Below, one piece after another: positions 12,201 through 53,519 of a stretch of DNA of 64,000 nt (positions within the stretch are counted from its first letter, which is position 1; the number at the start of each line of letters is the position of its first letter). Source of the DNA: Malacoraja senta (Eukaryota); NCBI GenBank assembly GCA_038087875.1, contig CM075978.1, positions 174,716,001 to 174,780,000 on the forward strand, given 5' to 3'. The translations under genes were made by a program, and so were the position numbers. The notes under the pieces were generated by a model, which had not been told where the DNA came from, did not search any database, and worked only from the letters and a program-made list of their open reading frames with translations.

Positions 12201-15200
12201 TGGAGGCTTTGGAGAAGGTGCAGAAGAGATTTACTAGAATCTGGATCAGAGAGTATTGGATATAAGAAGTGGTAGGACAAACGGATGGTTTTCACTAGAG
12301 CTTCGGAGGCTAAGGGGCGGCCTGATCGAAGTATATAGTATTATGAAGTATATAAAATTATGAGGCATATAGAATATATTAATCACTATATAGACCAGCA
12401 CAGCATAGGAAGTATATAGAAGTATATAAAATTATGTGAGGCATAGATAGGGTAGATGGCCAGAATCTTTATCCCAGTGTAGAAATGCTAGATTAGAGGA
12501 CACAGCTTTAAGGTGAGAGGAATAAAATTTAAAGGTGATGTGCGAAGTAAGATTTTTACACAGACTGGTTGGTGGATGTTTGGAACGGGCTGACAAGGGA
12601 AACTTTTAGGTTCCTAGTGAAATTTATAATAACCTTCAAAGCATGCACTCTCATTTTTTATTTGTCCATGATCTTCAATCCATTTATCTATTTATTTATT
12701 TATCTGTCTGTCCATTTGTCTTGTCTATTTATTTGTTTGTTTGTTTATTTATTATCAGATCTCAGAATTCTTAGAATTCTTATTATCAGATCATAGAACA
12801 ATTAGACTTGTGAAACATAAATCAGAGTGATCAAAGCAGCTCTTCAACCTTGATCCCCTGTTTGTTGAGGTCATCACCTTGCAGAAACGACCTATATGTA
12901 AATATGTATGTAGTTTGTTTGTTTATATTATTCTTATAACAAATGTAAAGCACTTTGGCCAACGAGAGTTGTTTTTTAAATGTGCTATATAAATAAATGT
13001 GACTTGACTTGACTTGCACAAATTTTTCTTGATCACCATATGCTTTGCTTAACCTAGTGTCGAGGAAATTGACCGAGGAAAATTAAAGGAAAAACTGAGA
13101 CTTTGAGGTTTGCTTCAAGAGACTTTATTGCATGATATCATGGAGAGATGGTGGCAGTTCTCTATCTTTGCAGCAGAATTAGCTGACAGTTATACTGTGC
13201 AGCAAACTTTTTTTTGTTCGATATAATTATACGAAAACATACTTCGTCCTTGGTTATATGTTTTCCTGTTGCTACCATCTACTACATGGGTATTCATTAT
13301 TTCAATAGTCATAATATACTTTTTGTTTATGTTAATCTTATTCAACAACAGATGATTAATACAAGTCAAACATAATACAAGGGCATCTTGACATTATTCT
13401 ATTAGGTATGTTACAATACTTACCTTCAGCAGCGCTGCAATTCTGCCACTGGCCGTGTGCCCGATTTTGGCGCTTTTGAGTGGGGGGGGGTGGGGGCGGG
13501 GTTAAAACGCGGGTTTCTCCTACCTTGTCCTGGATTATATTTCGTTGTAGTGCAAGCTTTTGCTGAAGAATCGTTCCGACGGGCGTTCTGTGTATTTTGT
13601 TTTAAAAATCCCCCGACAATTTCAGCGCTGGAGTTATTTAAAAATCAGCTTCTAAAGCCGACAACGGGGACGGATTTCACGCACGGGACAGGTAAACGAA
13701 AGTCGTTTATTTTATGTATAAAAGTGCTCCTTAAGATGCCTTTAGTTCACATTTTAAGTGATTTTTTCCCCCGAACGAACCGGCAGTATTTTTCATGCCG
13801 ATACGGGTTTAAATTCACCGCAAATGCAACGTTCCAAATGATCGCGTTCCAGAAAAACCCACTCGCAAGATGATTTAAATGGCCATTAATTTACAGGTAT
13901 TAAACATTAAATTCCTTCAATTTGGCCTATAAATCCATGACAATGAGATTTAAAAATTATGTTATATTGTGAATTCTTGTGTGAATGTTATTTGGACACT
14001 TAGGCTTTTTAAAAATGTTAATCTATTCTTAAGAAATTGATAGATGTTCAGATCTAGTAATTGAATTTTGTGATTAGCTACAATTAGGTAACTAACTAAT
14101 TATATGCTTTAATTTCATGTCGTCTAAGAAAGATTGTTTCATATTTGTTTCAGAATGCTTCAATCTATAATAACTGAAAATTTCTTTCAGTTCTCTTTAT
14201 TTTTAAGAATGTTATGGGCTTTTGACTGTCCTCGATCACAGCTTTTGTGTTAAGTCAATGGAAAAGCAATAGGGAACAAGATGCTAATTTCCGAGTATGA
14301 AAATGGCCATAGCTTTTTTAATACTGAAGATATGAAAGTGAATTAGGTGTCAAATTAAACTTCTTTTTATGCTTTATCTGATGGGATAAATTACAGACTT
14401 GAGTTTTAAAATCTCAACATTTTGTAACATTGCTAATTCTATCACATCTTTCAAGCAGACTGCGCCACTGGCCCCTCTCTGAGCCAATCAAAACCCCCCC
14501 ATTTACTACAAAGTTTCTGGCTGCTAGCTGCAGGGGGCGCGGGTGGTCTACCCAACTAATGCCCTTGTGTTTACAGGGTTAATTATTGTGATCCAGCATT
14601 CGGTAACTTTCCACTGAAAAACAGGCGTCCTTATCCATGTAGGAACATGAGGCTGCCTCAGTGTAGCCTTGAATTCGCAAGCTCTTCTTTGTGTTTAGCG
14701 AACTTGTTTTCTTAACTCTGTGGACCACACCAGCACCAGGCCTATGTAGCCTAATCTGAAGGGTACGTTCACCGGAGTAAAGTTAGATTCCCACAGAGTG
14801 AAGCTCAGAGAGAGCCCATGTTGAAATTCAAAATGGAAGAACAGCTCATTTCTTCCACACCTCATGGCTAAAAATCTATCCTTGATTATACCCAGCAACT
14901 GAAGTCCACTGTGTTGTGGGATAGAAAATTTCAAAGATTACTTGCCCGCCATGCATGATCTATCCTCAAGTTGATGGACCCTCATCCTGAAATTCTAGCC
15001 CTTGGTTCTTGGATCTCCTAGCATAAGAATCAGCCTTCTTTGCATTAATTCATTTTACACTAGTTTAGGTGCCAATGGTATTTCTTCTAATTTTTTCCAA
15101 GGTTCAGTGTGTACAGATATAGCCAGTTCAAACTCATTTCATGTTATTGCAGGTTGACACACTGGATCTGTGCTTCAAGTGCTCATGTCCAGTTAAATCT

Positions 15201-17580
15201 TTCTTGAAGTTTTGGGGGAGAAAGCAGGTGAATGCAGTAAGAGGGAAAGATAGATCAGCCATGATTGAATGGCGGAGTAGACTTGATGGAACGAATGGCA
15301 TAATTCTGTACCTAGAACTTATGAACTAAATACTGAGCCAATCCTGTACACACACTTTCAAGTGTGGATTTGTCATAGCTTTGTTGAGTAGTTTCAGATC
15401 ATCATTTCTTTTGTACTCCATACTTGACTTTCAGCAAAGCAAGCATTGTGGATCAGTGTCAATCAAGAATGCAAGTGACTCACCATTTTGAATAGGCGTA
15501 TTACGTTCTAATTAGAGAAACATAAGGGAGGTAATAGTGAATATGAATGACACCATAGTTGTGACCGGAAATGGAAAAACTGTTCGGGGTGCACATCCAC
15601 ATTTGCCAGTAGTACCCCAGTACCAGATGCTGGATACCCGATTTGTCACCATTTGAAAATCATAGTCTGATCACCACTTAGGGCTCCACTGTTTATCCTA
15701 CACTGATGATAACCATATAACCATATAACCATAACAGCACGGAAACAGGCCATCTCGGCCCTTCAAGTCCGTGCCGAACATTTTTTTTAAATTTTTTAAA
15801 AAATTAAAAATAAATACTTCCCCCTAGTCCCATCTACCTGCACTCAGACCATAACCCTCCATTCCTTTCCCGTCCATATACCCATCCAATCTATTTTTAA
15901 AGGATAACATCGAACCTGCCTCCACCACTTCCACTGGAAGCTCATTCCACACAGCTACCACTCTCTGAGTAAAGAAGTTCCCCCTAATGTTCCCCCTAAA
16001 CTTCTGTCCCTTAATTCTCAAGTCATGTCCCCTTGTTTGAATCTTCCCTACTCTCAATGGGAAAAGCTTATCCACGTCCACTCTGTCTAACCCGCTCATA
16101 ATTTTAAAGACCTCTATCAAGTCCCCTCTTAACCTTCTGCGCTCCAAAGAATAAAGACCTAACTTGTTCAACCTTTCTCTGTAACTTAGTTGCTGAAACC
16201 CAGGCAACATTCTAGTAAATCTCCTCTGTACTTTCAGCCCACTCTTCCAAATGGCCTAAATCTCTCTGTAGACTTTGAAAATCTACTTCATTATCCACAA
16301 CACCACCTATCTTAGTATCTGCATACTTACTAATCCAATTTTCCACACCATCATCCAGATCATTGATGTACATGACAAACAACAGTGGACCCAACACAGA
16401 TCCCTGAGGCACCCCACTAGTCACCGGCCTCCAACCTGACAAACAGCCATCCACCATTACTCTCTGGCATCTCCCATTCAGCCACTGTTGAATCCATCTT
16501 GCTACTCCACCATTAATACCCAACAATTGAATCTTCTTAACCAACTTTCCATGAGGAACCTTGTCAAAGGCCTTACTGAAGTCCATATAGACAACATCCA
16601 CTGCTTTACCCTCATCAATTTCCCTAGTAACCTATTCGAAAAATTCAAGAAGATTAGTCAAGCATGACCTTCCAGGCACAAATCCATGTTGACTGTTCCT
16701 AATCAGACCCTGCTTATCCAGATGCTTATATATATTATCTTTAAGTATCCTTTCCATTAATTTGCCCACCACTGACGTGAAACTAACAGGTCTATAATTG
16801 CTAGGTTTACTCTTCGAACCCTTTTTAAACAACGGAACAACATGCGCAGTACGCCAATCCTCCAGCACTATTCCCGTTTCTAATGACATTTGAAATATTT
16901 CTCTCATAGCCCCTGCTAATTCTACACTAACTTCCCTCAATGTCCCAGGGAATATGATAGAATCTGCATTTACCTGGATAGATATGAAAGTTCATGATAA
17001 TTTTTTCTCTCCCAAGGATTGTGTACCCCTGGCAGTCGTTGGAAGCAACCTTGTCTTTGAGGTCAGTGGGAAAAAGGTCAGAGGTCGGCAGTACCCATGG
17101 GGAGTGGCGGAAGGTAAAAGTTCTGTTGAGCTTGGATTGTGCATGTGAGATTTTTAAACTTTTCAGTGTCAAAGACTGCATGGATCTGACTATTTACCTA
17201 GGCTTTCGACCTTAAACCAGTGCACAGGTGGACAAAGCAATAAACCCTTCAATCTAGTTTGACCATTCAGTTTAATCTCAGTTGATCAGTGACACATCAA
17301 CAAATTGATGCAAACCATTTTGCAATTAACTTGATAATTTTACAGTTGAGGTGGCTTGATTTGTTTTGGAATATTATTAAGAAATAAATTGGACAAACAC
17401 AGCTTGGAAGGTGTTGAACACTGTGTTTGGATCCTGGAACTTCTCCCCACAAATTTTCGCCCTGTAATTGATAAAGTTCATAGATTTAACATTCTACAGC
17501 TTTTGCACAAATCAGCAAATAATTGGCTTTATCAGTGTTAGATCACACAATGTACTAGACATATATACGTGTGTGTGTGT

Positions 17581-17615
<35 letters not shown>

Positions 17616-20600
17616 ATACACACACACACACGCACACATATATATTACATTTCCCCAATCATGCTTTAAATCCCGTTGCACTGCATCCTGTTTATCAGTG
17701 CCAAAAGCACAAATACAGGCTCTAGACTATTGTTTATTACATAACAAAAAGGGAAATATTGATGCTAATAAGCAGGTCAGCCTTGTTAGAGTAGGATGAG
17801 TACCTATGTCTGTATGATGAGGATGAAAATTGATTTACTTTTTTCTCAATCTTTCACAGTTGAAAATGGAGACCATTGTGATTTCTCCATTTTGCGCAAC
17901 ATGCTGATCAGGTAAAGTTCATCAGACAATGAAAATTAATCGTTGAATCAATGTGTTATTGCAGCACAGTGTGACTTGTGCTCCGTAACTTTAATTAATG
18001 ACACATTATTCTTTCACTGTATTTCATTTTATCTTTAGTGAAAATCCAATTTTCATTTGAGAGTGCTGATAAACTCCATCCTTGGAGGCAATTAGTCTTT
18101 TTATATAAGACAAAAGAATCTCAGTTTCTGAGCTATGTATATTTAATGTTCCAATCTCATTTGCTGAGATATATTCCAGGGTTGTTGGTAATCAGGGAAA
18201 ATGTTTTTGCCATCCACAAATGGTGTAGCTGACCTGGGAATGAACTACATTACATTCTTGAGATATTGTATATGGTTAGTGAGGGTACGAATAGGAAGAT
18301 AACACAGATGAATGCTTGTTGAGAACCTGGTGCTGGGAGCAGGAGTTCAGGATTTTGATCATTGAGATCTCTACTGTGTCAGAGGTGACCTGTACAAGAG
18401 AGATAGGCTGAGGGGTGACCTTAAGAGATTTATGAAATTATGAGGGGCATAAGTAGTGTAGATTGTCTTTTCACTAGGTAGGAGAGCCTAGAAGTAAATT
18501 TGGGGTGAGAGTGGAGAAATTTGGAGATCTGTCTTTTTTTCCGCCTAGGGTGATGAATAACTGGAACGAGCTGCCAATGGAGCTGGAGGCAGTTATCACG
18601 TTTAAAGATGTTTAAACAGATAGATAGGAAAGGAATTGAGAGATACAGGCCTAATCCAGGTAATTGGCATAGGAGGCATCATGGTAGACATAGACAAGGT
18701 GGGCTGACAGGGCCCATTTCTCTGTGGCATTATTCTGTGTGTTGGTGGGTAGTTTTGGCTGTTGGGGAATAAATTATGCTCCCGGGTTTGACACATGCTT
18801 AGTGTTGAGTTATACTTATGATCTGCAAGGAAGCTTCAACTCGCGTCCTCGTCATGCTTTTATTGCAGGACACATATGCAGGATCTGAAGGAGATCACCA
18901 ACAATATCCACTACGAAAACTATCGAAGTCGAAAGCTGGCAGCTGTAACTGGCAATGGAGTTGATGCCAGTAAGACAAAAGGCCGCCTCACCAGGTGAGC
19001 TACATGGAAAATATGCTGCCTGTTGCCCAGTTAGCTTGCAAAGCAAACCCACCATAAATTTATCCACATGCCGATTAATGAGATGAGCAGTAACCAAACA
19101 TCAGATTTGAGCTGCAGCACATTGAGCTGCATGGAGATGTTGAGCTGTGTACTCGAACTTTGTTGCACTGCCTTCCTCCCATAACCTCTGACATCCTTCC
19201 TAATCAAGAATCAAGATCTCTGTCCATAGACCGATCAGATATATCCTAGGATATTGTGGGAAACCAGAGAGGAAATTGCAGGAGCCCTGGTTGAAATTTA
19301 CGAGTCGTCCTTAAATTCAGGAGAGGTGCTGGAAGACTAGAGGGAGTGGCAAATGTTGTGCGTCTTTTCAAGAAAGGCTGCAGGGAAAATGCTGGGAACT
19401 ATAGGCTGGTGAGCTTAACATCTGTAGTTGGAAAGTTACTGGAGAGTATTCTGAGGGATTGGTTATACAGGGATTTGGATTGGCAAGGGCTGATTAGGGA
19501 TAGTATGCTTTGTAGCATACTTACTAACCAACCCATCTGCATGTACATCAAAATTGTTCACATTACAAACAACAGAGGTCCCGACACACATCCCTGCGGA
19601 ACTCTACTGGTCAGGGACCTACAGCCAGAACAATATATCTTTCCACCCCGACCCAGTATCTTCTATGAGTAAGCCAGTTCTGAATCCAACAACCATGGAT
19701 AGGACACAACAACAATAACAAATAAATAACCAAATTATTAGTTATTCTAAGTAAAACAGGCCATGACAGTGCAAAAAAACATATGACATAGAGCAACCAT
19801 AGTACAAAGCCCTTCGTGAATTGGTGTTGAGTTAGGGTTGTAGTTAGCGTTGTGCAAGGTTTTGCAAGAACCTTATGATAAATAGGGAAAAAACACTTTT
19901 TGAACTTGGAGGTAACAATTTTCAGGCACCTGTAACTTCTTTCCACGCCAGCAGTGAGAAGAGTGCGTGGTCAAGATGGGGTGGTTTTTGATTTTGCTGC
20001 CTTCTTGAGGCATTGCTTCTTGTAGATCTCTTCAATGGTGGGGAGGTCAATACCAGGAACTCTCCAATGCTGTCTCGTCCATGAAGACAGGTTTATGGTT
20101 CCTTGGCTTTCCCTTTCTGAAGTTAACATCAGCTTTTTGATCTTGCTATTGTTGAGAACAAGATTGTTGTCTAGCACCATTCAACTAGATTATCAATGTC
20201 CCTCCTGTTCTCTGATTTGTTGTTGCTTGTTATTCGTTCAACAGCGGTGGTATCATTGGCGAACATGGGTCTGAGATGTTACAGTGCTGATGATCAGTGA
20301 GGAGGAAGTGTTGTTATCAATCCCTAGTCTGAAGTCGACTGAAGAGAAAGGCTGGGTTCCAGTTGCTCAGTGTGAACAGAGTCCCAGCTCCTGAGTCTGA
20401 TGATGAGTTTGGTAGGAATGTTCCTGATGTCCAAATGGTCCAGCAGAGTAGAGAATCGGCAAGATTGCATCTGTCTCCACAATTAGCAAAAGAAGGGTCC
20501 CACCCAAACCATCACTTTTGAGTCAGGTGGTCCAATTTTCCAAAGTGCAGGCTAGTCATAGGCTTCTCTGATGGTGGAGTAGCAGTGGTCATGAGTATTT

Positions 20601-23600
20601 AATCCTCTCTTGCTGGAGATGTACTAATGGTAGTTTGGAAGTCTTCTTCAAGCTAGCTTGTTGAAATCCTCGGCAATGATGAGGAAGACTTTGGCCAACA
20701 CCGTCTGGTGTTTGTTAATGTCGGTGTATTGTCCCTCGCATGCTGGCCGATTATCTGCCTGGGGTAGGTTGTAGACTGCAGTCATGACAACTGAGGTGAA
20801 TTGCCTGGGGAGATGAAAGGGAGAGCACAAGGTCAAAGGTCCAGGTGGGGGACACAAGACTGGACAAGCATGTCTCCTCTGTGTCCTGTGGTTTTTCTCT
20901 CACTCCCATTCCCCCCAGATGGAACCAGGATATGGGATCTCCCAGTTGTTAATTATTTTAACTTCCCTTCCCATGCCGTACTGATGTTTCTTTCCTGGGC
21001 CGCCTTCATTTCCAGAATGAGGCCACACACAAACTGGAGGAACAAAACCGTTACCTCTTATTCCGCTCTGGTAGCTTGCAACCCAATGGCATGATCATTG
21101 AATTCTCCAATTTTAGGTAACCTCTAACAACCTCCATCCCCCCCTTCCCCTGTGCCCACCTGCACTCACACTTATTTCTCCCCTCTCGCTCCTTACATTC
21201 CTTTCTCTGGCTTCACAATTTGCAACTTTTCAATCTATCTCACAAATTCTGCTTTAATCTCTTGACATTTGCTCCAACCATCTGCTATCAAAGCCCCCAC
21301 TCGCCTGTATCCACCTATTACCTGCCACACTTTGTCTTGCCTCTCCTCTCTCCCACCTTTCTCCCCCCTCACCACTCCACAATTAGCAAAAGAAGGGTCC
21401 CACCCAAACCATCACTTATCATGTTCTTCAGAGATGCAGTATGAATCGCTGAGTTGCTCCAGTACTTTGTGTCCTTATTTTGGACCGCCATGCCCAAGCA
21501 CAGAGATTACCAGGTTTTGAGGAATTGAATTATCAGGTGAGGTGGGATATACTGGGACTGGAGTTAAGGAGGCTGAGGGGTGATGTTGAATAGTCAGTTT
21601 TTTTTCCAGGGTAGGATAATTTAGGACTAAAAGGCCTTAGGTTTAAAGTGACAGTGGAAAGATTTAACAGGAACATGATGGGCAACTTTTTCACATAGAG
21701 GCTGGTATTTAGAATGAGCTGCCAAAGAAAGTATTAAAGAAGGAACTGCAGATGCTGGAAAATCGAAGGTGTGCCAAAGAAAGTAGTTGAGGCAGCTACA
21801 TTAACAGCCTATAAAAGACATTTGGACAGGTACATAGATAGAAATGGTTTAGAGGTTTAAAAGGACAATGGGAGTAACACTGCCAACTAGTGGCTGATGA
21901 ATCTAACCTCACTGGTGGTGAAGATATTCAAGATGTAACTGTTGTCTTCTAATAAGTCACTGAATGGAATATATGACATGGATGAGAATGAATGGGGTAT
22001 GATTAGTAAGTTTACAGATGCAGTATAATGTGGATAAATGTGAGGTTATCCACTTTGGTAGCAAAAACGGGAAGGCAGACTATTATCTAAATGGTGGCCG
22101 ATTAGGAAATGGGGAGATGCAGCGAGACCTGGGTGTCATGGTACACCAGTCATTGAAAGTAGGCATGCAGGTGCAGCAGGCAGTGAAGAAAGCGAATGGT
22201 ATGTTGGCCTTCATAGCAAGAGGATTTGAGTATAGGAGCAGGGAGGTTCTACTGCAGTTGTACAGGGTCTTGGTGAGACCACACCTGGAGTATTGCGTAC
22301 AGTTTTGGTCTCCAAATCTGAGGAAGGACATTATAGCCATAGAGGGAGTGCAGAGAAGGTTCACCAGACTGATTCCTGGGATGTCAGGACTTTCATATGA
22401 AGAAAGACTGGATAGACTTGGCTTATACTCGCTAGAATTTAACAGGAGATTGAGAGGGGATCTTATAGAAACGTACAAAATTCTTATGGGGTTGGACAGG
22501 CTAGATGCAGGAAGATTGTTCCCGATGTTGGGGAAGTCCAGGACAAGGGGTCACAGCTTAAGGATAAGGGGGAAATCCTTTAAGACCGAGATGAGGAAAA
22601 ACTTTTTCACACAGAGAGTGGTGAATCTCTGGAACTCTCTGCCACAGAGGGTAGTTGAGGCCAGTTCATTGGCTATATTTAAGAGGGAATTAGATGTGGC
22701 CCTTGTGGCTAAAGGGGTCAGGGGGCATGGAGAGAAGGCAGGTACGGGATACTGAGTTGGATGATCAGCCATGATCGTATTGAATGGCGGTGCAGGCTCG
22801 AAGGGCCGAATGGCCTACTCCTGCACCTATTTTCTATGTATCTATGAAAGAAAATTGGCGGAGTCATAGATAGGGAAGGTTGTTGAAGACATAGATCAGT
22901 TGTAAAGTTGGATAGAGCAATGGCATATGAAATTTAATCTAAACAAGTGTGAGATAAAGCACTTTGGGAGGTCATATTCAAGTTAGGTATGTAGAGGAAA
23001 TGGCAATGATGTTAACATCGTTGATAACAGAGAGACCCAATGGTATAAGTATGTGCTTCCCTGAAGGTGGCGACAGGGTAGTGAAGAATAATTTGTCACC
23101 CTTGCCTTCATTGGTCAAGGAACTTAAGTACAGGAATTGAGAACTTGAGTACAAGAATTATGTTACATCTATGCAAGATTTTAGTGAGACAAAACTTTGA
23201 AGTATTGTGTGCAGTTCTGGTTACCTAGGAAGAGAAAGGATATCATTAAGAGGGAAAGGGTGCAGAAAAGACCTGTCCCACTTGGGTGACCTAATCCGCG
23301 AGCTCTGGTGAGTTTGCCCTTGACTCATACTCGCAGAATGGTCGACACGCGGTCGTAGGAAGTCTTCGTAACTCTCCTTCATGCTTGAGAGTGGTCTTCG
23401 CGTACTCGAGGCCTCAGCTAGGTCGCGGCGTTTTTTTCAATATGTTAAAAAAATGCCCGCGAGTAAAAAAAGGTTGCCATGGAAAAAATGGATACTTTTG
23501 TTACTCGTAGGTTTAGTCGTAGTAGGTCGTAGTAGGTCGGCATGTTAGTCGTAGGTAATCGAGGGTAGTCGAAGGTAGTCGTAGATAGTCTTCATCATAG

Positions 23601-25864
23601 TCGAAGGGAGGTCGACGGAGGTCGTCACTCTCCACTATTCGGTGTCCAATTTTCCCGAAGTTAGTCGTAGCTAGTCTTCAACATAGTCGAAGGAGGTCGA
23701 AGGAGGTCTTTTACATAGTCGAAGGAGGTCTTCAAAATGTCATTTTTTCAAACTCTCCTAAACTCGCCAATTAGGTCGCCCAAGTGGGACAGCCTCTTAA
23801 GGATATTACTGGGACTGGACAGCTTGCGTTAGATGAAGTGACAGGATAATCTGGAATATTTTTCCCTGGAGTGTCCATAATTCCCTGAAAGTAGCAGCAC
23901 AGGTGGATAGGGTAGTGAAACAGTCACGAGTGTTTAATTGTCAGCAAAACTTAAGTGCTGGAGAAACTCAGTGAGTCAGGCAGCATGTGGAGGGAATGGA
24001 TAGGCGATGTATCAGTTCAAGGCCCTTCAGATTGAATGTAGTAGGTGGGAGAAAGCTGAAAAAGAGGTGGGGCAGGACAAAGCCCAGGCTATAGGTGAAG
24101 GATGGGTTGATTGGCAGTTGGTATTCACAGGCTGGAGATGAAATGGAGACAGGTGTGTCATATAAGGAGAGAAGAGGAGTAAAATATAAAGTCAGGTGGA
24201 GGGATATGTGGAAGGGGATGGTTTCTGGGAGGGGGCGGTGGGATAGTGGGTGAAATGGGTGAGCACCGTGGTGGGGAGGCGCAGGAAAGGGGGTGTGGTG
24301 TTACATAAAATTGAAGAATTGGCATAAAGCAATAGGGGCATAAAGCAGGGAAATGCGTTTAGAGTGCTTAGGCATCACAGGCAAAGTCGGCCAAAACATC
24401 TCGTTTCTGTGCTGAATATTTCTTTATTATTCTATGAACAGGATGCAGGTGTTGACCTTTGCGCTTGACCTTGCTGTACTAACATTAAGGATAGTTAAAA
24501 GGAGAAACTGGAGAGCGCATACTTTTTTGTGAAACTTCCTGTGCCGGCTTGCATGCGACTTCCTTGTGGAAGGTACTTCAGTAAATGGTCACGGAGTCTG
24601 CTGTTCAATCTTAGGTTTGTTTGGCAGACGATAGGCCTGGTCATGCTCACTGCCTGCCCAGAACAAATTGAGGCACAGGTAAAGTGCAAGAAGGTAATTG
24701 ACTTTTATTAATGCAGGAGCCCTCTCGCTGAGATGGAGGAAGAGCGTCGAGAGCATGTGGCGAAGATGAAGAAAATGGAGACTGAGATGGAACAAGTGTT
24801 TGAGATGAAGGTCAAGGAGAAGAAACAGAAATTGAAAGACTCTGAGAATGAAGTAAGCTTTTCTAACCATCATCCCTACCCCACATCTCCATTGACCCTT
24901 CCGTACGCTTTCAGCACCTTCCTCTCTCTGTAGCCTTTGACTGCAACTAATGGCATTTTGTTGTCTTGTAACCCATCCATCTTGGTGTCCTCTGCTTGTC
25001 CCAGAATATGTAATTCTGTCCCTACCTGGACGCATCTGTACTGAAAGAGAGTGGTTGGTTTGAATTGGACATTACCCAGGGAGCATGACTGATGTACTCA
25101 GCCATTTCAGAGTGTTGTAGAAACTAAAGGCACTCTTCTTCCTTTCGTGTTGCCATTCCCTCCCTCTTCCCTCCTACTCCACCCCCTTCCCCTTCTCCCT
25201 TCCCTGGCTTCCCCTCCTTCCGCTCTCACTTTCCCTTTCCTGCCGCCTCCTTCCTTGCTACCCCCACCCTCCCTCTCCTCCTCCCTTCTCTGTCTCCGTG
25301 CCCCTGTAGCTGCAGCGCCGACATGAACAGATGAAGAAAAACCTGGATGCTCAATACAAGGAGCTGGAGGAGAAGAGGAAGCAGTTTGAGGAAGAGAAAG
25401 TAGCATGGGAGGCAGAGCAACGCTTGTTGGAACAGCAGAAATTGGATGCTTCGAAGTTAGTGGTAATTGTACTTGAGAGTGTATGAGGAGTTTTGTGTGG
25501 GGGAAACGCTGAGTGTGAATGGGCATTGTATAGCAATGGGGAGACCTGCTCTTGGGTATGGGCTGAGGAAATGAGGGAAGAGTGTGACAAAGGTGGCTGT
25601 GAGAGGTGAAGTGTAAATAAGGGAGCGTGTACAGCTAGCTGCAGGTATGAGGGAGATGGTACATGGGTACATGAAAGGAGAGTGGAGACAGTGAGCATGA
25701 GATGAGGGATGTAAGCTTGCATGCTACTGCATGTCACTGCCCTCCCAGGACTGTTCCTCTTGTTCTGCATATTACGTGTGCTGTGTTTGAGTAAATTAAC
25801 TCTTTCTTTTTCCATCCTTCCCAGAACAATGGAGAAGAACAAGAAGAAAGGGAAGATCTTCTGA
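3168..25864 (+). CDS. SEPTIN7: Septin-7-family GTPase gene, 5'-partial, 11 coding exons in window (possibly the septin15/sept7-like paralog)
   Basis: Spliced exons give G1 GESGLGKS, G3 DTPG, G4 AKAD, the septin-unique element [13 protein letters not shown], a coiled coil and the C-terminus [13 protein letters not shown]. All introns are GT-AG. Exon sizes 106/101/135/118/93/97/52/126/136/146/40 match the recalled vertebrate SEPT7 pattern, except the first exon (-1 nt) and the tenth (+6 nt). Confidence 0.95.
3696..4049 (+). mobile_element. tRNA-derived CORE-type SINE with L2-like 3' tail
   Basis: A box TGGCGCAATGG, B box GGTTCGAATCCC, CORE-like GTGTCCTTGGGCAAGACACTT, stem-loop AGCGCCTT/AAGGCGCT, (TTA)n tail and TTATCCT flanking repeat. 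Confidence 0.88.
5058..5158 (+). CDS. SEPTIN7: Septin exon [33 protein letters not shown](C)
   Basis: ccag|GTT ... TG|gtag; 101 nt; DTPG motif. Confidence 0.96.
5647..5781 (+). CDS. SEPTIN7: Septin exon [44 protein letters not shown](G)
   Basis: gcag|T ... GG|gtgag; 135 nt. Confidence 0.96.
6200..6477. mobile_element. Truncated Harbinger-type MITE (right TIR only)
   Basis: AAGTGGGACAGGCCC followed by ATAA. Confidence 0.6.
7087..7965 (-). mobile_element. Unclassified non-autonomous retroposon-like repeat
   Basis: GC-rich body, internal hairpin and (CAATT)n tail. Confidence 0.5.
8197..8314 (+). CDS. SEPTIN7: Septin exon [39 protein letters not shown]
   Basis: ccag|G ... CAG|gtaaag; 118 nt; AKAD motif. 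Confidence 0.96.
9046..9138 (+). CDS. SEPTIN7: Septin exon [31 protein letters not shown]
   Basis: aaag|ATT ... AAG|gtaaat; 93 nt. Confidence 0.95.
9520..9825 (+). mobile_element. CR1 RT fragment running into the gap
   Basis: [26 protein letters not shown]. Confidence 0.8.
9826..9959. other. Assembly gap (134 N)
   Basis: N run. Confidence 0.99.
10183..10562. repeat. 36-bp minisatellite (about 10 copies) within a hAT/Charlie-like non-autonomous element ending at about 10633
   Basis: Unit approximately CCCGGGACTGGCTGCAGTTCCCAGGTCGCCTGCGTG; terminus reads CAGGGGTCAGCAACCTACGGCCC on the - strand. Confidence 0.8.
10818..11285. mobile_element. Harbinger-type MITE
   Basis: TIR GGCCTGTCCCACTTGCATGCGA / TCGCATGCAAGTGGAACAGGCC; TAA left flank. 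Confidence 0.85.
11290..11782 (+). mobile_element. Unclassified non-autonomous retroposon-like repeat with internal GGGAGCTTCGA repeats
   Basis: Rex-like 3' tail (ttcactatacc..gacaataaa); hairpin shared with the element at 7087-7965. Confidence 0.5.
11800..12600 (+). mobile_element. Old CR1 3' fragment
   Basis: [13 protein letters not shown] and PHVQFWCP remnants. Confidence 0.8.
12880..13018 (+). mobile_element. L2-type LINE 3' end
   Basis: TGTAAAGCACTT..TGTGCTATATAAATAAA followed by a (TGACT)n tail. Confidence 0.65.
13403..14435 (+). mobile_element. Non-autonomous DNA transposon (hAT-like), copy 1
   Basis: Imperfect TIR TAGGTATGTTACAA / TTGTAACATTGCTA; 7-bp TSD ATTCTAT. Confidence 0.85.
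15712..16950 (-). mobile_element. CR1 LINE 3' half
   Basis: RT ORFs 16632-16940, 16212-16601 and 15824-16210; short (ACCATATA)-type tail. Confidence 0.93.
17017..17113 (+). CDS. SEPTIN7: Septin exon [32 protein letters not shown]
   Basis: caag|GAT ... G|gtaaaa; 97 nt. Confidence 0.96.
17569..17645. repeat. Compound microsatellite (GT)n(AT)n(CA)n; similar CA/GCAC tracts at about 5853-5896 and 48040-48155
   Basis: Direct reading of the sequence. Confidence 0.9.
17860..17911 (+). CDS. SEPTIN7: Septin exon (V)[16 protein letters not shown](R)
   Basis: acag|TT ... AG|gtaaag; 52 nt. Confidence 0.95.
18869..18994 (+). CDS. SEPTIN7: Septin exon [41 protein letters not shown](R)
   Basis: gcag|G ... 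AG|gtgag; 126 nt. Confidence 0.96.
19950..20860 (-). mobile_element. Rex1/Babar LINE fragments
   Basis: [23 protein letters not shown] (endonuclease) and [13 protein letters not shown] (RT). Confidence 0.7.
22016..22846 (+). mobile_element. Young CR1 3' fragment, near-identical to about 40388-41205
   Basis: ORF 22018-22755 and the same 3' UTR and tail. Confidence 0.96.
23269..23796. mobile_element. Harbinger-type MITE inside old CR1
   Basis: 23-bp TIR CTGTCCCACTTGGG[T/C]GACCTAAT; internal GTAGTCGAAGG repeats. Confidence 0.85.
24717..24852 (+). CDS. SEPTIN7: Septin exon [45 protein letters not shown]
   Basis: gcag|G ... GAA|gtaag; 136 nt; coiled coil. Confidence 0.96.
25310..25455 (+). CDS. 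SEPTIN7: Septin exon [48 protein letters not shown](K)
   Basis: gtag|CTG ... AA|gttag; 146 nt. Confidence 0.95.
25825..25864 (+). CDS. SEPTIN7: Septin last coding exon [12 protein letters not shown]
   Basis: ccag|A ... TGA; 40 nt. Confidence 0.96.
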
Positions 25865-41641: not shown

Positions 41642-41699
41642 TTCTCCGCCAAAACGATACACTTTCCACTTCTTCCTCTTTTTTTTTTTGCTTACAAGA

Positions 41700-41717
41700 A
41701 TCCCGTTTCTGACACCA
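41700..41717 (-). promoter_or_regulatory. Primer-binding site, tRNA-Leu-like
   Basis: TGGTGTCAGAAACGGGAT; 2 mismatches to the recalled complement of the tRNA-Leu 3' end. Confidence 0.75.
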
Positions 41718-41963
41718 TGTCTAATTATTCTTATAATGAGGCTCGTACAACGACGTAATCGGAGTCTGTCTTTATTTAGCAACTCTGTACAGCAGTAGCC
41801 TCGTGTGCATGCCCGGGCCCGGCCCCTACGTCCCTCCGGTTACGCCCACAGCACCAACTTCAGGCCGGCTGCCATCACTGCAGCCTGACCACTGGCAGCA
41901 GCGCCACCCTCCGGCTACTACAAAATAAAGGCATTCCTTACACTATTATGCCATAATACCACA
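41718..41963 (-). repeat. 5' LTR
   Basis: TGTGGT...TTAGACA, immediately followed by the PBS. Confidence 0.95.
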
Positions 41964-48356: not shown

Positions 48357-48443
48357 TCACATCCCTTTCGTCCTTATCTTTTGATAAAGCCTCCGCCACT
48401 TCCGAAGGTGTACAGGCGTATATTCAATCACCTCCTTCATGAT
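48357..48443 (-). CDS. IgSF receptor probable terminal cytoplasmic exon IMKEVIEYTPVHLRKWRRLYQKIRTKGM* with ITIM-consensus IEYTPV
   Basis: Branch point gctaac plus ttttatag acceptor. Only phase 0 stays open, matching the 23-nt exon. AATAAA downstream at 48283-48288. Confidence 0.5.
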   Translation of the reverse strand: MMKEVIEYTPVHLRKWRRLYQKIRTKGM

Positions 48444-49057
48444 CTATAAAATCAACGGATTTTGTAGTTAGCTCACAACCGTGTACAGTCGCCCAAATGG
48501 TTCGCAAAACACTAGGAAGAAGAAATAATCCATTCGCCGTTCTGGAGAAAACCGCGTTTGTCTCCGTGTTTGTTTCACATATTTCAATCGCTCAAATGGA
48601 TACTAAAATCGTTACGAAAGATTATATTGAAGAATGTTGGAAGGGAAATGCTTGTCCTGTTTTTGTTGTATTCAAAGGCGTTAAAACGTGATCAGGGTAA
48701 TGTTGCAACAATTGGGCGTTAACCTGTTGACATTAGATTTGGAATAACTGTAACGAGTTTTGGGCGGACAGAATCGCAGAATCAGGTCTTGTTCGTAAGC
48801 ACCTGATGACTTTCTAAAGAATTGTATCGATTTTTGAAGCATCTTTTGAATAATCTTTTCGCATGGGCATGCATTTCCTTCATATGGTTAGTTTCATATT
48901 AGTTTTTAAATTATTATTACAGTTGGAAAGGGTGCAGAGATATTTACGAAGATGTTGCCAGGACATTTGCCAATGTGTTCCAGGCCCCCACTACTCTCTG
49001 CGTAAAAATCTTGCCCGCACATCCTCATTAAACGCCCACCCCCCAGAAATAATTTAC

Positions 49058-49080
49058 CGTTTTAAGCAGTTGAGTGCCAA
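49058..49080 (-). CDS. IgSF receptor small cytoplasmic exon IGTQLLKT
   Basis: ttcttctaaacttcag| acceptor and ACG|gtaaat donor; 23 nt, phase 1-0. The same segment is conserved in the relic at about 32405-32430. Confidence 0.65.
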
Positions 49081-50289
49081 CTGAAGTTTAGAAGAATACA
49101 TGCAATTATAGTAGAAATCGAAACTATATTTGAACCCGTAACTACGAACATTTCCCATCTACATGCGATACTAAAATACGGCATTACCAAAGTCCTATGT
49201 AGCTGCATAATGACGTGTTGACTCTTATATTAAGCGCCTCTAATACTGAAGGCAAGCATACTATTCGCCTTCTTTACCACCCTATATACTTGTGTTGCTA
49301 CGTTCAGTGAGCAATGAAGCTGGACTCTAAGATACCTCTGCACATCAATGTTAAGTGTCTTGCCATAAACTGTATACTTTCCCCTTACATTCAACCCCCG
49401 AAGTACAACATTTTATTTTTGCACTGGTTAATCCCCATCTGTCATTTCTTCGCCCATTTTTGCAACTGGCCCATATCCCGCTATATCATCTGACTGCTTT
49501 CCTCACTGTCAGCATTTCCTTCAATGTTGGTGTCGTCAATAAACCTACTCAACAACCCATCTGCATTTATATCCAGGTCATTTATATGTATCCAATCCAA
49601 TCTTCCAATCCAATGGGCAAGAGTTCAGTAGGAAGAGTACAACAGTTGCAGCGAACTGTCCTCGGAAGCATTTGTGACGTAAAATCCATGGAGGGAAGGT
49701 ATTTGAAGAGCGTTCTCAAACTACATTATCACCATAATAAGATTGTGAACATATACTGCGAAATATCTACTGCCGAAACCCCTTGGGAGTCGTGGGTTTA
49801 AAATAAAAGAAACATGACATCTGTAAGATTTGAATTTAACCCGATTTAGTTTAACAATTGTAATCAACAAAATAATATTAAACACTGTATACGTGGGTAT
49901 CCACTAATCGGTTAATTGAGTAATTATGACAGATATAACGTTGGCCTTCGTTTTTCACTAACTTTGTTTAGTTTAGATTTGAAATACAGCGCAGAAACAG
50001 ATTCCCGCACACTAACACTATCCTACACACACCAGGGACAATTTACAATTATACTAAGCCGATTAGCCTACAAACCTGTACGTCTTTGGAGTGTGGGAGG
50101 AAACCGGAGCTCCCGGAGTAAATGCACGCACGTCACGAGGAGAATGTACAAACTCCGTACAGACAAAACCCGTAGTCAAGATCGCACCCGGGTCTCTGGC
50201 ACTGTACAGCAGCAACTTTAAAGCTGGGCCCGGTGTTTCCCTCTATTCTTTAAATGAACCCGAAGGAAATTACACTGAATCTTACTTAC

Positions 50290-50403
50290 TTTCCTGTTTA
50301 CGGAATTGACATTTTCTCCAACTGAGAACTATGACGGCAAGGCAAACGAATACGCTCAATGTACATCCAAAAACCAAGAGGAACAGCTGTGTTTTTTCTT
50401 TGG
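50290..50403 (-). CDS. IgSF receptor transmembrane exon AKEKTQLFLLVFGCTLSVFVCLAVIVLSWRKCQFRKQE
   Basis: ctcgtag|CC ... GAA A|gtaagt; 114 nt, phase 1-1. About 22 uncharged residues are followed by a basic stop-transfer cluster. Confidence 0.88.
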
Positions 50404-51379
50404 CTACGAGAATAATCATCAGCATTAATCATCTTTGCAATAATTATCATTTTTGTTGTACGCAGCTTATGCAGCAAAATGTATAAGCCTATTTGTTGTG
50501 GTGTGATGCGCACTTTCCGCGTATGCACAACAAAGTCACGGACGCAGACTGGTATCCTTCGCCATTTAAAATATTACATTTATGAATATTGTTTCACTTT
50601 ATTCATATTTATTTCGCTGGAACCACTACAACTCGAGCTCATTATGGGAACAAGCAATTATCTTTTTAATTTCTTTGAGTCAACGGTAATTAAGTTTTTG
50701 ATTTACAAAATATATAAACACATTTCTGACCATATCTCTCAATAAGTAACAAAGGATTTAAGATCTGACCAAAATCCGTAGTGTTTTAACACGAAAGACA
50801 GTTCATTGAGGGAAGAAATTGATTTATATGTATTTGCCTCTCTCTTTTTCATGCCAACTAGTTAATAGAGTGAACCAGTTCAGAAATAAACCCTGCGGCT
50901 CATCTTGTCCGGATCCACCACCATGCACCCATTCCCACCAAACCCAGTTTACTCTCTCCATGTTGTCGTTACCTCCCCCTGTTTACGGTTACAATACAAA
51001 CCTATAGACCAGGAGACATTTGCAGAGAAATTAACCGTCCAACGGGTACATCTTTGGGACACGGAGGGCACGGGAGTTCTTGGGGGGAAAACGTGCATTT
51101 ATAGGGAAAACGCAAATTCCACAAAGTGGATTAATTTGGTCATGCAGACTGACTCAACCCGGGCTACTGTAGCTGGGAGGTAGGCACAAAATTGCTGGAG
51201 TAACTCAGCGGGGCAGGCAACATCACTGTAGAGAAGGAATGGGTGACGCTTCGGGTCGAGACCCTTCTTCAGATTGTAACTGGGAGGCAGAAGCTCTACC
51301 AGCAACACAGTGTGCGGCATCATAGAATTGATGATAACATTTTTACATAATTCACATTTGTCATAGCTTTTATTGGCAT

Positions 51380-51429
51380 TTATTTTCTTTTTGGAAACAG
51401 GCGCAGAACGACTATCTTTGGTGGATATC
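51380..51429 (-). CDS. Candidate alternative terminal exon GYPPKIVVLRLFPKRK* (secreted isoform, or relic of a second C1 exon)
   Basis: ttttgtag|GA acceptor 100 nt after the C1 donor, in frame. TAA at 51380-51382; AATAAA at 51379-51384 and 51369-51374. Confidence 0.45.
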
Positions 51430-51529
51430 CTACAAAATTCACATGCCCATAGCAATAGGAATGAAAATAATATGAAGCTGTTTATTGCGGCCTCTATTGT
51501 CAGCACATGAAACATCGCCAGCATCTTAC

Positions 51530-51838
51530 CCGGATTAAAACTGGCATCAACGTAAATAGCCATAGCTGGACTCTGAAGTGTGTGGTGGGTTACCAGACAG
51601 GTATACAAAGCGCCACTCCCGGACGGCTGCAATGTTTCGAAGTTGCTGGACGCTGCATAAGTTCCGTTTGAGTTCAGGATTTTACTAGTGCTGATACCAG
51701 TCTCAATGTTGGTGTCATTTTTATACCAAGTGAAGGTGAGAGACTCCGGGTAAAACTCTCCTGTCTTGCACACAAGGACGAGATTGGACGCGTTTGTTTC
51801 CGGCGCTTTGGGGGAAAGGCTGACAGGTTCTGGAGAAG
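51530..51838 (-). CDS. IgSF receptor C1-set domain exon
   Basis: cacag|CT ... CCG G|gtaag; 309 nt, phase 1-1. LVCKTGEFYPESLTFTW and YTCLVTH C1 motifs; N-glycosylation sequons NAS, NDT, NGT. Confidence 0.93.
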
Positions 51839-52916
51839 CTGTGGGACGCGAGAAAGAATAAAATGATTATCTGAATTACCATTTCAGTTTAGAATCTAGT
51901 GCTTCCAATTAGACTGGAGAGATGAATACTGACGGGCTCCCCAGCAAATCCAACGGTTATTTGTAAGAAACAATTTTTTTTATCAACAAGCTACAATTCG
52001 CCTATAATTTGGATGATTTTAATGTTACATTGTTCAAATCAAACCAATTCGACCAGGTTATTAGCCTGATTAAGTCTACACAGAGAATAGCACTTCAACA
52101 GCAACTCATTCCGCTTTTCTGTTCGCTGGTAGTTAGTCTTACTCTACGCACTCCAGCAATTCGATGTAACATTAAACAATTCTCAGTAAGTTATGTTGCT
52201 ATCTTCTAAATTCTAAAGATCACGACCCTAGTTTCAGCGATATGATCTCGATATAAGCTTCGGAATCCAGATGTCTTTCCGACAAATGTGCCTATCATTT
52301 CTTCTAAGACCTATAAATTCTGGCACTGGTATGATGGCCAAAACTGCTTACATGCGGGTATATCTGCCCAGGGTTTTGCTTCGTTGAGCCATTACCCTTT
52401 CACCTTTGCCCTTGAGGTATACAAGCAATCTTCCCATAGATTTCTGGGATACTTTATTTGCCAGATTATCACAACGCATATTGCTACCGAGCACACAAAA
52501 ATGCTGGAGAAACTCAGCGGGTGCAGCAGCATCTATGGAGCGAAGGAAATAGGCAACGTTTCGGGCCCCCGCTGGCCTTCAGATTCCTCTTGTGCTACGT
52601 GAATCGTACAATTATATATATACCAAAAAATATATATAAAGGCGTTCTAATCATCTACCGTTCACTAACTGAATGATCTAAGCAACCAACGGCAGACAGA
52701 CGTTACAAACATAGTTGTAGAAATAGCAACATTGTCCTTATTCTAATGTTGTAAGTAGTACAAAGAGATGAACTATTGACATTATTTAAAGATAGGTTGA
52801 CCTGGCCCATTGACTTTTTACGGAGTCAAAAGGAACCCCGAAACGGAGTAGATTCGATGGGCGGAATGAACTAATTCTGCTCCTTTGACTTATGAACCGC
52901 ACTGCAGTCCTCTCAC

Positions 52917-53228
52917 CGTGCACCTCAAGCCTGGATCCGGTTCCTTTCACAATCTCATTTTTTTGCTGACCTACACCACAGTAGTATAACCCAGAGTCGG
53001 CGACACGGACATCAACGATTTTGAGCAAACTCCTATCGTTTTCCAACTGAATAACCCGTTTTCTGCCATGGGAACTTGGTTGTAATAGTCCTTCATCACC
53101 AAGTTTCCACCAATTTACAGTCAGACTTGCTTTGTTCGGAATCTCGCTGGTAACGCATTCGAAGATGATATCTGTTCCCACCATCACCGTGCTAGCTTTA
53201 GGGATCTGGGATATTGTCGCTGGAGCCA
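52917..53228 (-). CDS. IgSF receptor V(J)-type domain exon
   Basis: gacag|TG ... CAC G|gtgag; 312 nt, phase 1-1. B-strand Cys (IIFEC), C-strand Trp (VNWW), DSGLYYC and J-like KGTGSRLEV all lie in one exon. Confidence 0.93.
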
Positions 53229-53353
53229 CTGTCAAACAGAAAGAAATGTTGCGATGAAATATATTTTAGACACAATAACTAGTTTAATCGTATGTAGGTA
53301 GATACGTGGATGATCTACAGGACAACAAGACGCTGAAGCATTAGGAAGACTAC

Positions 53354-53399
53354 CTTCATAAAAAATCCACAGCGCGCAAAGGTACAAATAGATTAACAT
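53354..53399 (-). CDS. IgSF receptor leader exon MLIYLYLCALWIFYE
   Basis: ATG at 53399, hydrophobic signal peptide, 46-nt phase-1 exon with G|gtagtc donor, and a 125-nt intron to the V exon (typical Ig/TCR-like L-V layout). Confidence 0.8.
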
Positions 53400-53519
53400 T
53401 GTAGAACAGAATCTGGTCTATCCAGAAACTGTGGCGTTGTTTGGTTGTAGATAGCAGTTTCCTAAAGGTCAGGTCTTGTTCGTGATACGACGTGCTCTCG
53501 TTTTGCGCGCCCAACTTGC

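What the first reader, a model, noticed from the sequence alone, without database searches (positions are those of the whole stretch)
48357..53399. Non-rearranging, germline-joined VJ-C1-TM-ITIM immune receptor with antigen-receptor-like architecture
Seen: six phase-compatible exons on the - strand (L 46, VJ 312, C1 309, TM 114, cytoplasmic 23 and 87 nt) give an open 296-aa type I membrane protein. The V exon carries its own J-like G-strand (YYC-GVGQQKNEIVK-GTGSRLEV) with no RSS, and is followed by a true C1-set domain. Known: C1-set domains are largely restricted to Ig/TCR, MHC/B2M, tapasin, SIRP and a few B7 relatives. Single-exon VJ plus C1 genes (VJC1/PRARP-type, and SIRP-like V-C1-C1) are discussed as descendants of the pre-RAG antigen-receptor ancestor. 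Inference: this is a cartilaginous-fish member of that class with one C1 domain and an inhibitory tail. The ORF track misses the leader, TM and tail exons.
Basis: partly seen in the sequence, partly recalled or inferred. Interest (0 to 1): 0.85.

Follow-up and report, generated by a model that had tools for sequence, protein, structure and literature searches.

The report
Skate VJ-C1 receptor with fossil ITIM

Summary
Four of the six proposed exons are real: leader, single-exon VJ, C1 and TM. Pfam confirms V-set and C1-set. Spliced RNA contigs from two related skates show the leader-V, V-C1 and C1-TM joins.

The 23-nt "exon 5" is not supported. It lies inside a decayed LINE fragment. Its GT donor is CT in Leucoraja erinacea and in another skate. 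An RNA contig joins the TM exon straight to the last exon.

That join puts the last exon in another frame. The protein is 266 aa and ends ...RKQENHEGGD*, without an ITIM. Predicted orthologues in six other elasmobranchs also have short, ITIM-less tails.

In the sevengill shark a 44-nt exon keeps that frame, and an inhibitory paralogue encodes its first ITIM (LTYAAL) at the same place.

The gene is the conserved tail-less lineage of a large VJ-C1-TM receptor family found only in cartilaginous fish. The family has inhibitory, Arg-TM and tail-less members. This scan has met it repeatedly on this chromosome, and RefSeq predicts it under inconsistent names. I found no paper describing it.

The gene lies next to SEPTIN7. 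Any link to the pre-RAG ancestor remains untested.

The parts
53354..53399 (-). Exon 1: start codon and most of the signal peptide (46 nt, phase 1), followed by a 125-nt intron (split leader)
   Evidence: borders. X1 record 6 and X9 record 30 join 53354 to 53228. The N-terminus is identical to the Leucoraja orthologue P0001.
52917..53228 (-). Exon 2: V-set domain with its own J-like G strand (YYC...KGTGSRLEV) in one exon, no RSS
   Evidence: Pfam V-set 1.3e-9. No CACAGTG/CACTGTG in 52700-53400. In the family V profile only TCR/Ig V domains align through the G strand. Spliced contig X9 record 30.
51530..51838 (-). Exon 3: C1-set constant domain (FYPESLTFTWYKN ... YTCLVTHH)
   Evidence: Pfam C1-set 2.7e-14, against CD80-like C2-set 3e-5. 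Best PDB matches are Ig lambda/heavy constant domains and UrIg2. X9 record 30 joins it to the V exon.
50290..50403 (-). Exon 4: short stalk, uncharged TM helix (LFLLVFGCTLSVFVCLAVIVL) and juxtamembrane WRKCQFRKQE
   Evidence: X1 record 1 and the 22.7-depth X9 contig cover exactly 50290/1-50404.
48424..48443 (-). Coding start of the last exon in the frame actually used: (N)HEGGD plus stop (TGA at 48426-48424)
   Evidence: X1 record 1 joins the TM exon directly to this exon. The same join and frame appear in the Leucoraja (DH*), Pristis (DHERKS*) and Heterodontus (EHGSGS*) models. Translation.
48411..48428 (-). Fossil ITIM (IEYTPV) in the 3'UTR, out of frame with the coding sequence
   Evidence: It aligns by position with VEYTPV (Leucoraja), LEYSPP* (Pristis), VENRLL* (Heptranchias orthologue, in frame there) and LTYAAL (first ITIM of the inhibitory paralogue P0168). 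All lie in a last exon starting A(C/T)C-ATG. There are 1-, 3- and 10-nt indels at or downstream of the motif in related skates; the 3-nt one at 48412 lies within it.
49058..49080 (-). It is a chance AG...GT inside a repeat.
   Evidence: Skipped in the X1 transcript contig. Donor is CT in Leucoraja and organism C. It lies inside the LINE remnant and in a high-copy depth zone.
48920..49591 (-). Decayed LINE (CR1/L2-like) reverse-transcriptase fragment in intron 4
   Evidence: tblastn of the window's own intact LINE ORF (38720-41122): aa 506-780 match 49591-48920 with stops, E 1e-21.
4956..25861 (+). Neighbouring gene: 3' half of SEPTIN7, convergent with the receptor gene (context only)
   Evidence: Septin motifs in exon-sized ORFs. 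Exon 8177-8335 matches Septin-7 best, 4.5e-19 against 8e-14 for Septin-9. The Leucoraja locus has the same arrangement.

Best explanation
The locus is an intact, expressed skate gene of five exons: leader, VJ, C1, TM and a short terminal exon. It encodes a 266-aa type I membrane glycoprotein. The ectodomain is built like one antigen-receptor chain (germline-joined V-J plus one C1 domain). The TM is uncharged and the 17-residue cytoplasmic tail has no ITIM.

It is the skate orthologue of a conserved, one-per-species lineage inside a large VJ-C1-TM receptor family found only in cartilaginous fish. Other members of that family carry long ITIM/ITSM tails (inhibitory type) or a short tail with an arginine in the TM (activating type).

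This lineage descends from an inhibitory-type ancestor. In batoids the 44-nt exon between the TM exon and the last exon is gone. The TM exon therefore splices straight to the last exon in a shifted frame, which stops after 6 codons. The former first ITIM is stranded in the 3'UTR.

Inferred, not shown: the protein keeps ligand binding through a fast-evolving V domain but cannot recruit SHP phosphatases. It would then act as a non-signalling counterpart (decoy, adhesion or competitor role, as SIRP-gamma is to SIRP-alpha) to the inhibitory paralogues beside it in the cluster.
For: - Domains. The AF2 model of the orthologue shows two beta-sandwich domains plus a TM helix, pLDDT 81.
- Splicing: X1 records 1 and 6 and X9 record 30.
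- Short tail: translation. Orthologue models P0001, P0002, P0003, P0015, P0166 and P0169 all lack an ITIM.
- Orthology: a 7-member clade with SH-aLRT 100, one gene per species. In a broader group with 95% support, an ITIM-bearing clade (P0168/P0157/P0074) and P0072 are its nearest relatives; their order is unresolved.
The inhibitory paralogue P0168 has the same exon order and the same T-M start of the last exon, with LTYAAL at the matching place. No homologue of the 44-nt exon is detectable in three batoid introns.
- Family make-up: ITIM tails and Arg-TM members.
- Family limited to Chondrichthyes: all 24 of the top single-V hits whose names were looked up (from a 1.84-billion-protein search) are chondrichthyan V-C1 proteins.
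- V-domain divergence: dN/dS about 1.4 against Leucoraja, with changes clustered in the CDR3-like loop, versus 0.59 in C1.
Against: - There is no RNA from the window's own species. In this species alone the 23-nt segment has a GT donor, so a minor ITIM isoform cannot be excluded.
- In X9 the contigs break exactly at the TM-exon/last-exon junction and have different depths (22.7 vs 12.5). That could mean alternative 3' ends.
- Overall dN/dS against Leucoraja is near 0.9 on few substitutions, so constraint in skates is weak.
- The functional role (decoy or adhesion) is inferred by analogy only. No ligand, expression pattern or partner is known.
- The direction of change (exon lost, rather than gained in Heptranchias) rests on comparison with paralogues, and the tree has no outgroup.
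Confidence: 0.75

Rival explanations
1. One reading: an inhibitory VJ-C1-TM receptor whose 23-nt exon 5 sets the frame so that the last exon encodes an ITIM tail (296 aa).
For: AG/GT borders and an open frame in this species. The frame is the ancestral coding frame of that exon. Family paralogues really are ITIM receptors. The X9 contig break at this junction might hide an alternative form.
Against: The transcript contig of a related skate skips it. The donor is CT in two other skates. The segment is part of a LINE remnant. Indels of 1, 3 and 10 nt in the supposed tail-coding exon in related skates show no coding constraint. All seven orthologue products lack an ITIM.
Confidence: 0.07
2. It is a B7/butyrophilin-type cell-surface ligand (IgV-IgC, TM, short tail) that is bound by a receptor on another cell, rather than a receptor of the SIRP/antigen-receptor type.
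For: The best Foldseek hits in Swiss-Prot models are CD276, PD-L1, NCR3LG1 and butyrophilins, E 1e-16 to 1e-14. It has an uncharged TM and a short motif-less tail. NCBI names some orthologues NCR3LG1-like or CD276 homologue.
Against: The V domain has a conserved J-like G-x-G...L-x-V strand that B7 V domains do not align to: PD-L1 and CD276 alignments stop at profile position about 85-89. The C domain scores C1-set 2.7e-14 against CD80-like C2-set 3e-5. SIRP-alpha aligns across both domains in the sequence-profile search (5.7e-31), whereas no B7-family chain is in the top 60. Its nearest paralogues are ITIM receptors. Foldseek E-values for SIRP, Ig lambda and TAPBPL are within two orders of magnitude of the B7 hits.
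Confidence: 0.12
3. In skates the gene is drifting toward a pseudogene: having lost its signalling tail, it is no longer under selection.
For: Pooled dN/dS against Leucoraja is about 0.9, and 1.38 in V. Tail sequences differ in every species.
Against: The reading frame is intact with no indel over about 780 coding nt in two skates, while the flanking introns are full of indels. Exons are more conserved than introns (94.5-96% vs 88-93%). Spliced transcripts are present in two related species. The lineage is kept in seven species spanning sharks and batoids.
Confidence: 0.06

Closest known systems
SIRP family (SIRP-alpha, -beta, -gamma) of tetrapods
   Same: A non-rearranging N-terminal V domain with a J-like G strand is followed by a C1-set domain and a TM. 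The wider family comes in inhibitory (ITIM), charged-TM and tail-less versions, and this gene matches the SIRP-gamma-like tail-less state. The family profile aligns to SIRP-alpha across V plus C1 (2wng, 5.7e-31). NCBI labels many paralogues SIRP-alpha-like.
   Different: It has one C1 domain, not two. No bony-vertebrate protein appears among the 24 top V-domain hits whose names were checked. The neighbour is SEPTIN7, so no synteny with the SIRP cluster has been shown. Orthology was not tested, and CD47 binding is unknown.
UrIg / UrIg2 (non-rearranging elasmobranch antigen-receptor-like genes; PMC12227049, PMC10751288)
   Same: Elasmobranch genes with a single-exon VJ, a split leader and C1-type domains. 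UrIg2 (9dmx) is among the best PDB sequence matches.
   Different: As described in the paper, UrIg2 has three to eleven C domains and UrIg also has several, whereas this gene has one. UrIg is MHC-linked and UrIg2 lies in the IgH/TCR-alpha-delta complex. This gene lies in a multi-megabase cluster of paralogues next to SEPTIN7. UrIg V domains are about 80% conserved between species. Here V identity is 43-49% between skates and sharks.
Ig light chains / TCR chains
   Same: V-J-C1 layout. The top Foldseek PDB hits are Ig light chains (E about 1e-15, 21-27% identity). The C1 exon's best sequence match is a lambda constant domain. Only antigen-receptor V domains align through the J-like strand.
   Different: V and J are fused in the germline and there is no RSS. 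There are no charged TM residues for CD3/CD79-type partners and no stalk cysteine for an interchain disulfide.
B7 family (CD276, PD-L1, NCR3LG1/B7-H6, butyrophilins)
   Same: IgV-IgC-TM-short tail architecture. These are the best Foldseek hits among Swiss-Prot models.
   Different: This gene has a J-like G strand. Its C domain scores as C1-set far better than as CD80-like C2-set. Its closest paralogues carry ITIM tails.

Membership tests
Chondrichthyan VJ-C1-TM receptor family (unnamed; RefSeq labels: SIRP-alpha-like, Ig lambda-like, NCR3LG1-like, tapasin-related-like) | Leader, single-exon V with W-W-K-x-G, D-S-G-V-Y-Y-C and N/K-G-T-G-S-x-L-x-V motifs, one C1 domain with F-Y-P...W-Y-K and Y-T-C-x-V-x-H, then TM | tested here: met
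   Alignment A1 shows all invariant columns present. Profile search gives E 1e-102 or lower for the four orthologues it returned (P0166, P0002, P0169, P0001). The gene sits inside the family tree with support 100.
Chondrichthyan VJ-C1-TM receptor family, inhibitory subtype | Cytoplasmic tail with one or more ITIM/ITSM motifs in the translated frame | tested here: not met
   The tail is SWRKCQFRKQENHEGGD. The ITIM-like IEYTPV is out of frame in the 3'UTR.
Chondrichthyan VJ-C1-TM receptor family, activating subtype | Short tail plus a basic residue inside the TM helix | tested here: not met
   The TM (LFLLVFGCTLSVFVCLAVIVL) has no charged residue, unlike P0048, P0177 and P0179.
SIRP family | V domain followed by two C1-set domains | tested here: not met
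   There is only one C1 exon between V and TM.
SIRP family | Orthology or synteny with the tetrapod SIRP cluster | not tested
   No SIRP sequences or flanking markers could be brought in. The only identified neighbour is SEPTIN7.
Rearranging antigen receptors (Ig/TCR) | V exon ending in an RSS, with separate J (and D) segments | tested here: not met
   V and the J-like strand are contiguous in one exon, and there is no heptamer in 52700-53400.
UrIg / UrIg2 | VJ exon followed by three or more C domains | tested here: not met
   A single C1 domain. tblastn of family proteins finds no further Ig exon in the window.
UrIg / UrIg2 | Linkage to the MHC (UrIg) or to the IgH/TCR-alpha-delta complex (UrIg2) | not testable with these tools
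   The window shows only SEPTIN7 and transposons.
B7 / butyrophilin family | IgV without a J-like strand, plus an IgC of CD80-like/BTN type | tested here: inconclusive
   Foldseek ranks B7 members first. However, the J-like strand is present, C1-set beats C2-set_2, and the sequence profile matches SIRP and Ig while returning no B7-family chain in its top 60.

The most novel reading that the evidence does not exclude
The conserved tail-less VJ-C1 chain is not a decoy. It is the invariant partner chain that pairs, C1 to C1 and V to V as in Ig/TCR, with the ITIM-bearing or Arg-TM paralogues of the adjacent cluster. That would make a heterodimeric, non-rearranging antigen-receptor-like complex, a living model of the pre-RAG receptor. 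The evidence does not exclude this: the ectodomain is light-chain-like, the lineage is single-copy and conserved while its neighbours are expanded, and its V loops diverge quickly.
Probability: 0.08. Interest if true: 0.85.

Novelty: new member of a known kind. Interest (0 to 1): 0.45.

Why it matters
Non-rearranging VJ-C1 genes are the material from which models of the origin of Ig and TCR are built (SIRP, UrIg, UrIg2, NKp30). Cartilaginous fish turn out to hold a large, unnamed VJ-C1-TM family with inhibitory, activating-type and tail-less members. I found no paper describing it, and public annotation names it inconsistently.

This gene adds three things:
- It defines the one lineage of the family that is kept one-to-one from skates to sharks, which makes a useful anchor for naming and for synteny.
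- It marks one edge of the cluster, next to SEPTIN7.
- It shows how an inhibitory receptor became tail-less: loss or skipping of a 44-nt exon shifted the frame and left the ITIM as a fossil in the 3'UTR.

It is also a caution for annotation. A phase-fixing micro-exon found by eye can resurrect a dead motif.

Tried and rejected
- Relic tail exons in intron 4. tblastn with the tails of the Heptranchias orthologue and sister paralogues gave only noise. The best hit fell inside the LINE remnant.
- A hidden homologue of the 44-nt middle exon in batoids. I enumerated all AG...GT candidates of length 2 mod 3 in the window, Leucoraja and Pristis introns. Nothing was similar, and the only high scorer in L001 lies in a Leucoraja-specific repeat insertion.
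- My first guess that the fossil matches the paralogues' second ITIM (TEYAAV). Exon mapping of P0168 shows it matches the first ITIM, at the start of the last exon.
- Linkage to TCR-gamma. From memory, human SEPTIN7 and TRG are both at 7p14. This was not tested, and an earlier unchecked scan note places TCR-gamma V segments on another piece of this genome. I dropped the idea.
- Ranking IgL, SIRP, B7 and UrIg as the closest family. Profile-versus-PDB searches and Foldseek give near-equal scores and disagree with each other.
- A proper phylogeny against those families.
- Paralogues within the window: none.
- Literature searches for a description of the family found only the UrIg/UrIg2, MHC, CD28-family and PD-1 papers.

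Full report
**What is in the sequence**

The V exon (53228-52917) matches Pfam V-set at 1.3e-9. The next exon (51838-51530) matches C1-set at 2.7e-14, far better than the CD80-like C2-set at 3e-5.

The V exon runs without interruption from the B-strand cysteine through YYC to a J-like KGTGSRLEV. No RSS heptamer occurs in or beside it. The leader is split by a 125-nt intron. The window holds only this one copy.

**Transcript evidence**

No RNA run of the window's own species was offered. X2 and X3 cover exons and introns evenly and differ at 0-2 sites per contig, so they appear to be DNA runs of the same species. Related skates, at about 93-95% identity, gave spliced contigs.

- X1 record 6 joins 53354 to 53228.
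- X9 record 30 is 914 nt. It carries the C1 exon directly followed by the V exon in the record's coordinates.
- Pieces of the same depth (22.7) cover exactly the TM exon (50290-50404) and the leader (from 53354).

Exons 1-4 and their three junctions are therefore supported.

X1 record 1 is 209 nt. It joins 50291-50404 directly to 48347-48444 with no letters between. The TM exon is spliced straight to the last exon, and the 23-nt exon is skipped.

**Why the 23-nt exon and the ITIM tail fail**

1. The transcript contig above skips the exon.
2. The exon lies inside a decayed LINE reverse-transcriptase fragment. Residues 506-780 of the window's own intact LINE ORF match 49591-48920 with stops, at E 1e-21. 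The zone is high-copy in all DNA runs.
3. Its donor GT is CT in Leucoraja erinacea and in organism C (49057 C>G).
4. The supposed ITIM-coding stretch carries indels in related skates. There are 1-nt deletions at 48389 and 48396/7, a 3-nt deletion at 48412, and a 10-nt deletion in Leucoraja.
5. The predicted orthologues end ...RKQEDH* (Leucoraja)...CKDHERKS* (Pristis) and ...RKEHGSGS* (Heterodontus). These have the same x-H start as the window's frame-A reading, as expected from the direct join.

For the window the direct join gives ...RKQE-NHEGGD*, with the stop at 48426-48424 and a protein of 266 aa.

**Where the ITIM comes from**

The last exon is homologous in the window, Leucoraja, Pristis and Heptranchias. 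In all four it begins A(C/T)C-ATG after the acceptor.

The sevengill-shark orthologue P0166 has a 44-nt exon (GARRKEEESQHFEER, phase 1 to 0) between the TM exon and the last exon.

An inhibitory paralogue in the same genome, P0168, has the same exon order. Its middle exon has matching flanks, and its last exon starts TMQQIDDKKLTYAAL..., which is its first ITIM.

Lined up by position, the motifs are:

| Gene | Motif |
|---|---|
| P0168, inhibitory paralogue (Heptranchias) | LTYAAL |
| P0166, orthologue (Heptranchias) | VENRLL |
| Pristis orthologue | LEYSPP* |
| Leucoraja orthologue | VEYTPV |
| Window | IEYTPV |

In batoids it is out of frame because the 44-nt exon is missing. I could find no trace of that exon in three batoid introns. 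In the one orthologue that still reads this frame, the tyrosine is replaced by asparagine.

**The family**

A HMMER scan with the V exon against 1.84 billion cluster representatives gave two kinds of top hit: giant multi-Ig proteins, and proteins of 220-410 aa with a single V match running through the J-like strand. All 24 of the latter that I looked up are V-C1 proteins of sharks, rays or chimaera. Their automatic names are inconsistent: SIRP-alpha-like, Ig lambda-like, NCR3LG1-like, tapasin-related-like and CD276 homologue. A profile search adds more members, again all chondrichthyan, usually several per chromosome.

Tails and TM segments sort the members into three types:
- long tails with 1-3 ITIM/ITSM motifs;
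- short tails with an arginine in the TM;
- short tails with an uncharged TM.

In a maximum-likelihood tree the window gene forms a clade with SH-aLRT support 100. The other members come from Leucoraja, Pristis, Heptranchias, Scyliorhinus, Mustelus and Heterodontus, one gene per species, and none has an ITIM. Within a broader group (95% support) its nearest relatives are an ITIM-bearing clade (P0168/P0157/P0074) and P0072; their branching order is unresolved.

Against Leucoraja, the V exon has 14 non-synonymous and 3 synonymous changes (dN/dS about 1.4), concentrated in the CDR3-like loop. The C1 exon gives 0.59. Counts are small. There is no indel in about 780 coding nt although the introns are full of them.

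**Comparison with known families**

- The family profile against PDB sequences aligns across V plus C1 to a lambda chain, to SIRP-alpha (2wng, 5.7e-31) and to SIRP-gamma. It also matches UrIg2 (9dmx, 1e-33, summed over several C domains).
- With the V profile alone, only TCR/Ig V domains align through the G strand. PD-L1, CD276 and pIgR alignments stop before it.
- An AF2 model of the Leucoraja orthologue (pLDDT 81) finds Ig light chains first in the PDB.
- Among Swiss-Prot models it finds B7-family members, SIRPs, Ig lambda and TAPBPL at nearly equal E-values.

I cannot say which family is closest.

UrIg and UrIg2 (PMC12227049, PMC10751288) share the single-exon VJ and split leader. They differ in having three or more C domains and in their described linkage to the MHC or to the IgH/TCR-alpha-delta complex. 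Five literature searches found no description of this VJ-C1-TM family.

**Context**

The rest of the window is transposons plus the 3' half of SEPTIN7. SEPTIN7 lies on the plus strand (exons 4956-25861) and is convergent with the receptor gene. The arrangement is the same in Leucoraja.

Earlier notes of this scan place an ITIM-bearing paralogue 5.7 kb beyond the window's end, and further clusters of the family up to about 5 Mb away on the same piece. The scan has therefore met this family before. This gene is at, or close to, the SEPTIN7-side end of the cluster. In Heterodontus the orthologue also has a V-C1 paralogue 6.7 kb upstream.

**Verdict**

The VJ-C1-TM observation is real and well supported. 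The inhibitory tail is not real for this gene.

The most likely reading is a tail-less, SIRP-gamma-like member that descends from an inhibitory receptor by loss of an exon. Shown: the gene model, orthology, exon homology and family make-up. Inferred: the direction of change and the non-signalling decoy or adhesion role.

It is a new member of a known kind (non-rearranging VJ-C1 receptors), in a family that is predicted in public gene sets but undescribed in the papers searched.

Noticed in passing
window 4956-25861 (+): The 3' half of SEPTIN7, in six exon-sized ORFs with the motifs [35 protein letters not shown] and the C-terminal KNKKKGKIF. It is convergent with the receptor gene. An assembly gap (N run) lies at 9826-9959 inside it.
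   Followed up: partly
window 51099-51773 (-): Reading through the C1 exon donor stays open for 224 codons and includes a hydrophobic stretch. Another scan note (s1-140760) reads 51369-51529 as a secreted/membrane switch. In X9 the intron depth is about 5, against 26 in the exon.
   Followed up: no
window 48300-50404 (X9 contigs): In organism E the spliced contig ends exactly at the 3' end of the TM exon (depth 22.7). A separate contig (depth 12.5) starts exactly at the last exon's acceptor. A graph break plus a depth step could mean alternative 3' ends in that species.
   Followed up: no
window 52917-53228 vs L001 10167-10480: The V exon has 14 non-synonymous and 3 synonymous differences from Leucoraja. 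Four of them cluster in the CDR3-like loop (CGVGQQKNE vs CNVVQQTDE).
   Followed up: partly
window 34954-41782 and 45193-46548: A nested transposon block: an intact 800-aa LINE ORF (38720-41122, +) inserted into an LTR-retrotransposon gag-pol (34954-38665 and 41201-41782, -), and a Harbinger/PIF-like transposase remnant (45193-46235, -). A second LINE 3' copy lies at 22018-22755.
   Followed up: no
window 48030-48170: A long (GT)n-rich microsatellite lies just downstream of the gene's poly(A) signals (AATAAA at 48288-48283 and 48227-48222 on the - strand).
   Followed up: no
window 49940-50327, 51104-51297, 52462-52655: Three very high-copy short repeats (SINE-like, depth 10^5-10^7 in every run) lie in introns 2, 3 and 4. 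They swamp read-laying output.
   Followed up: no
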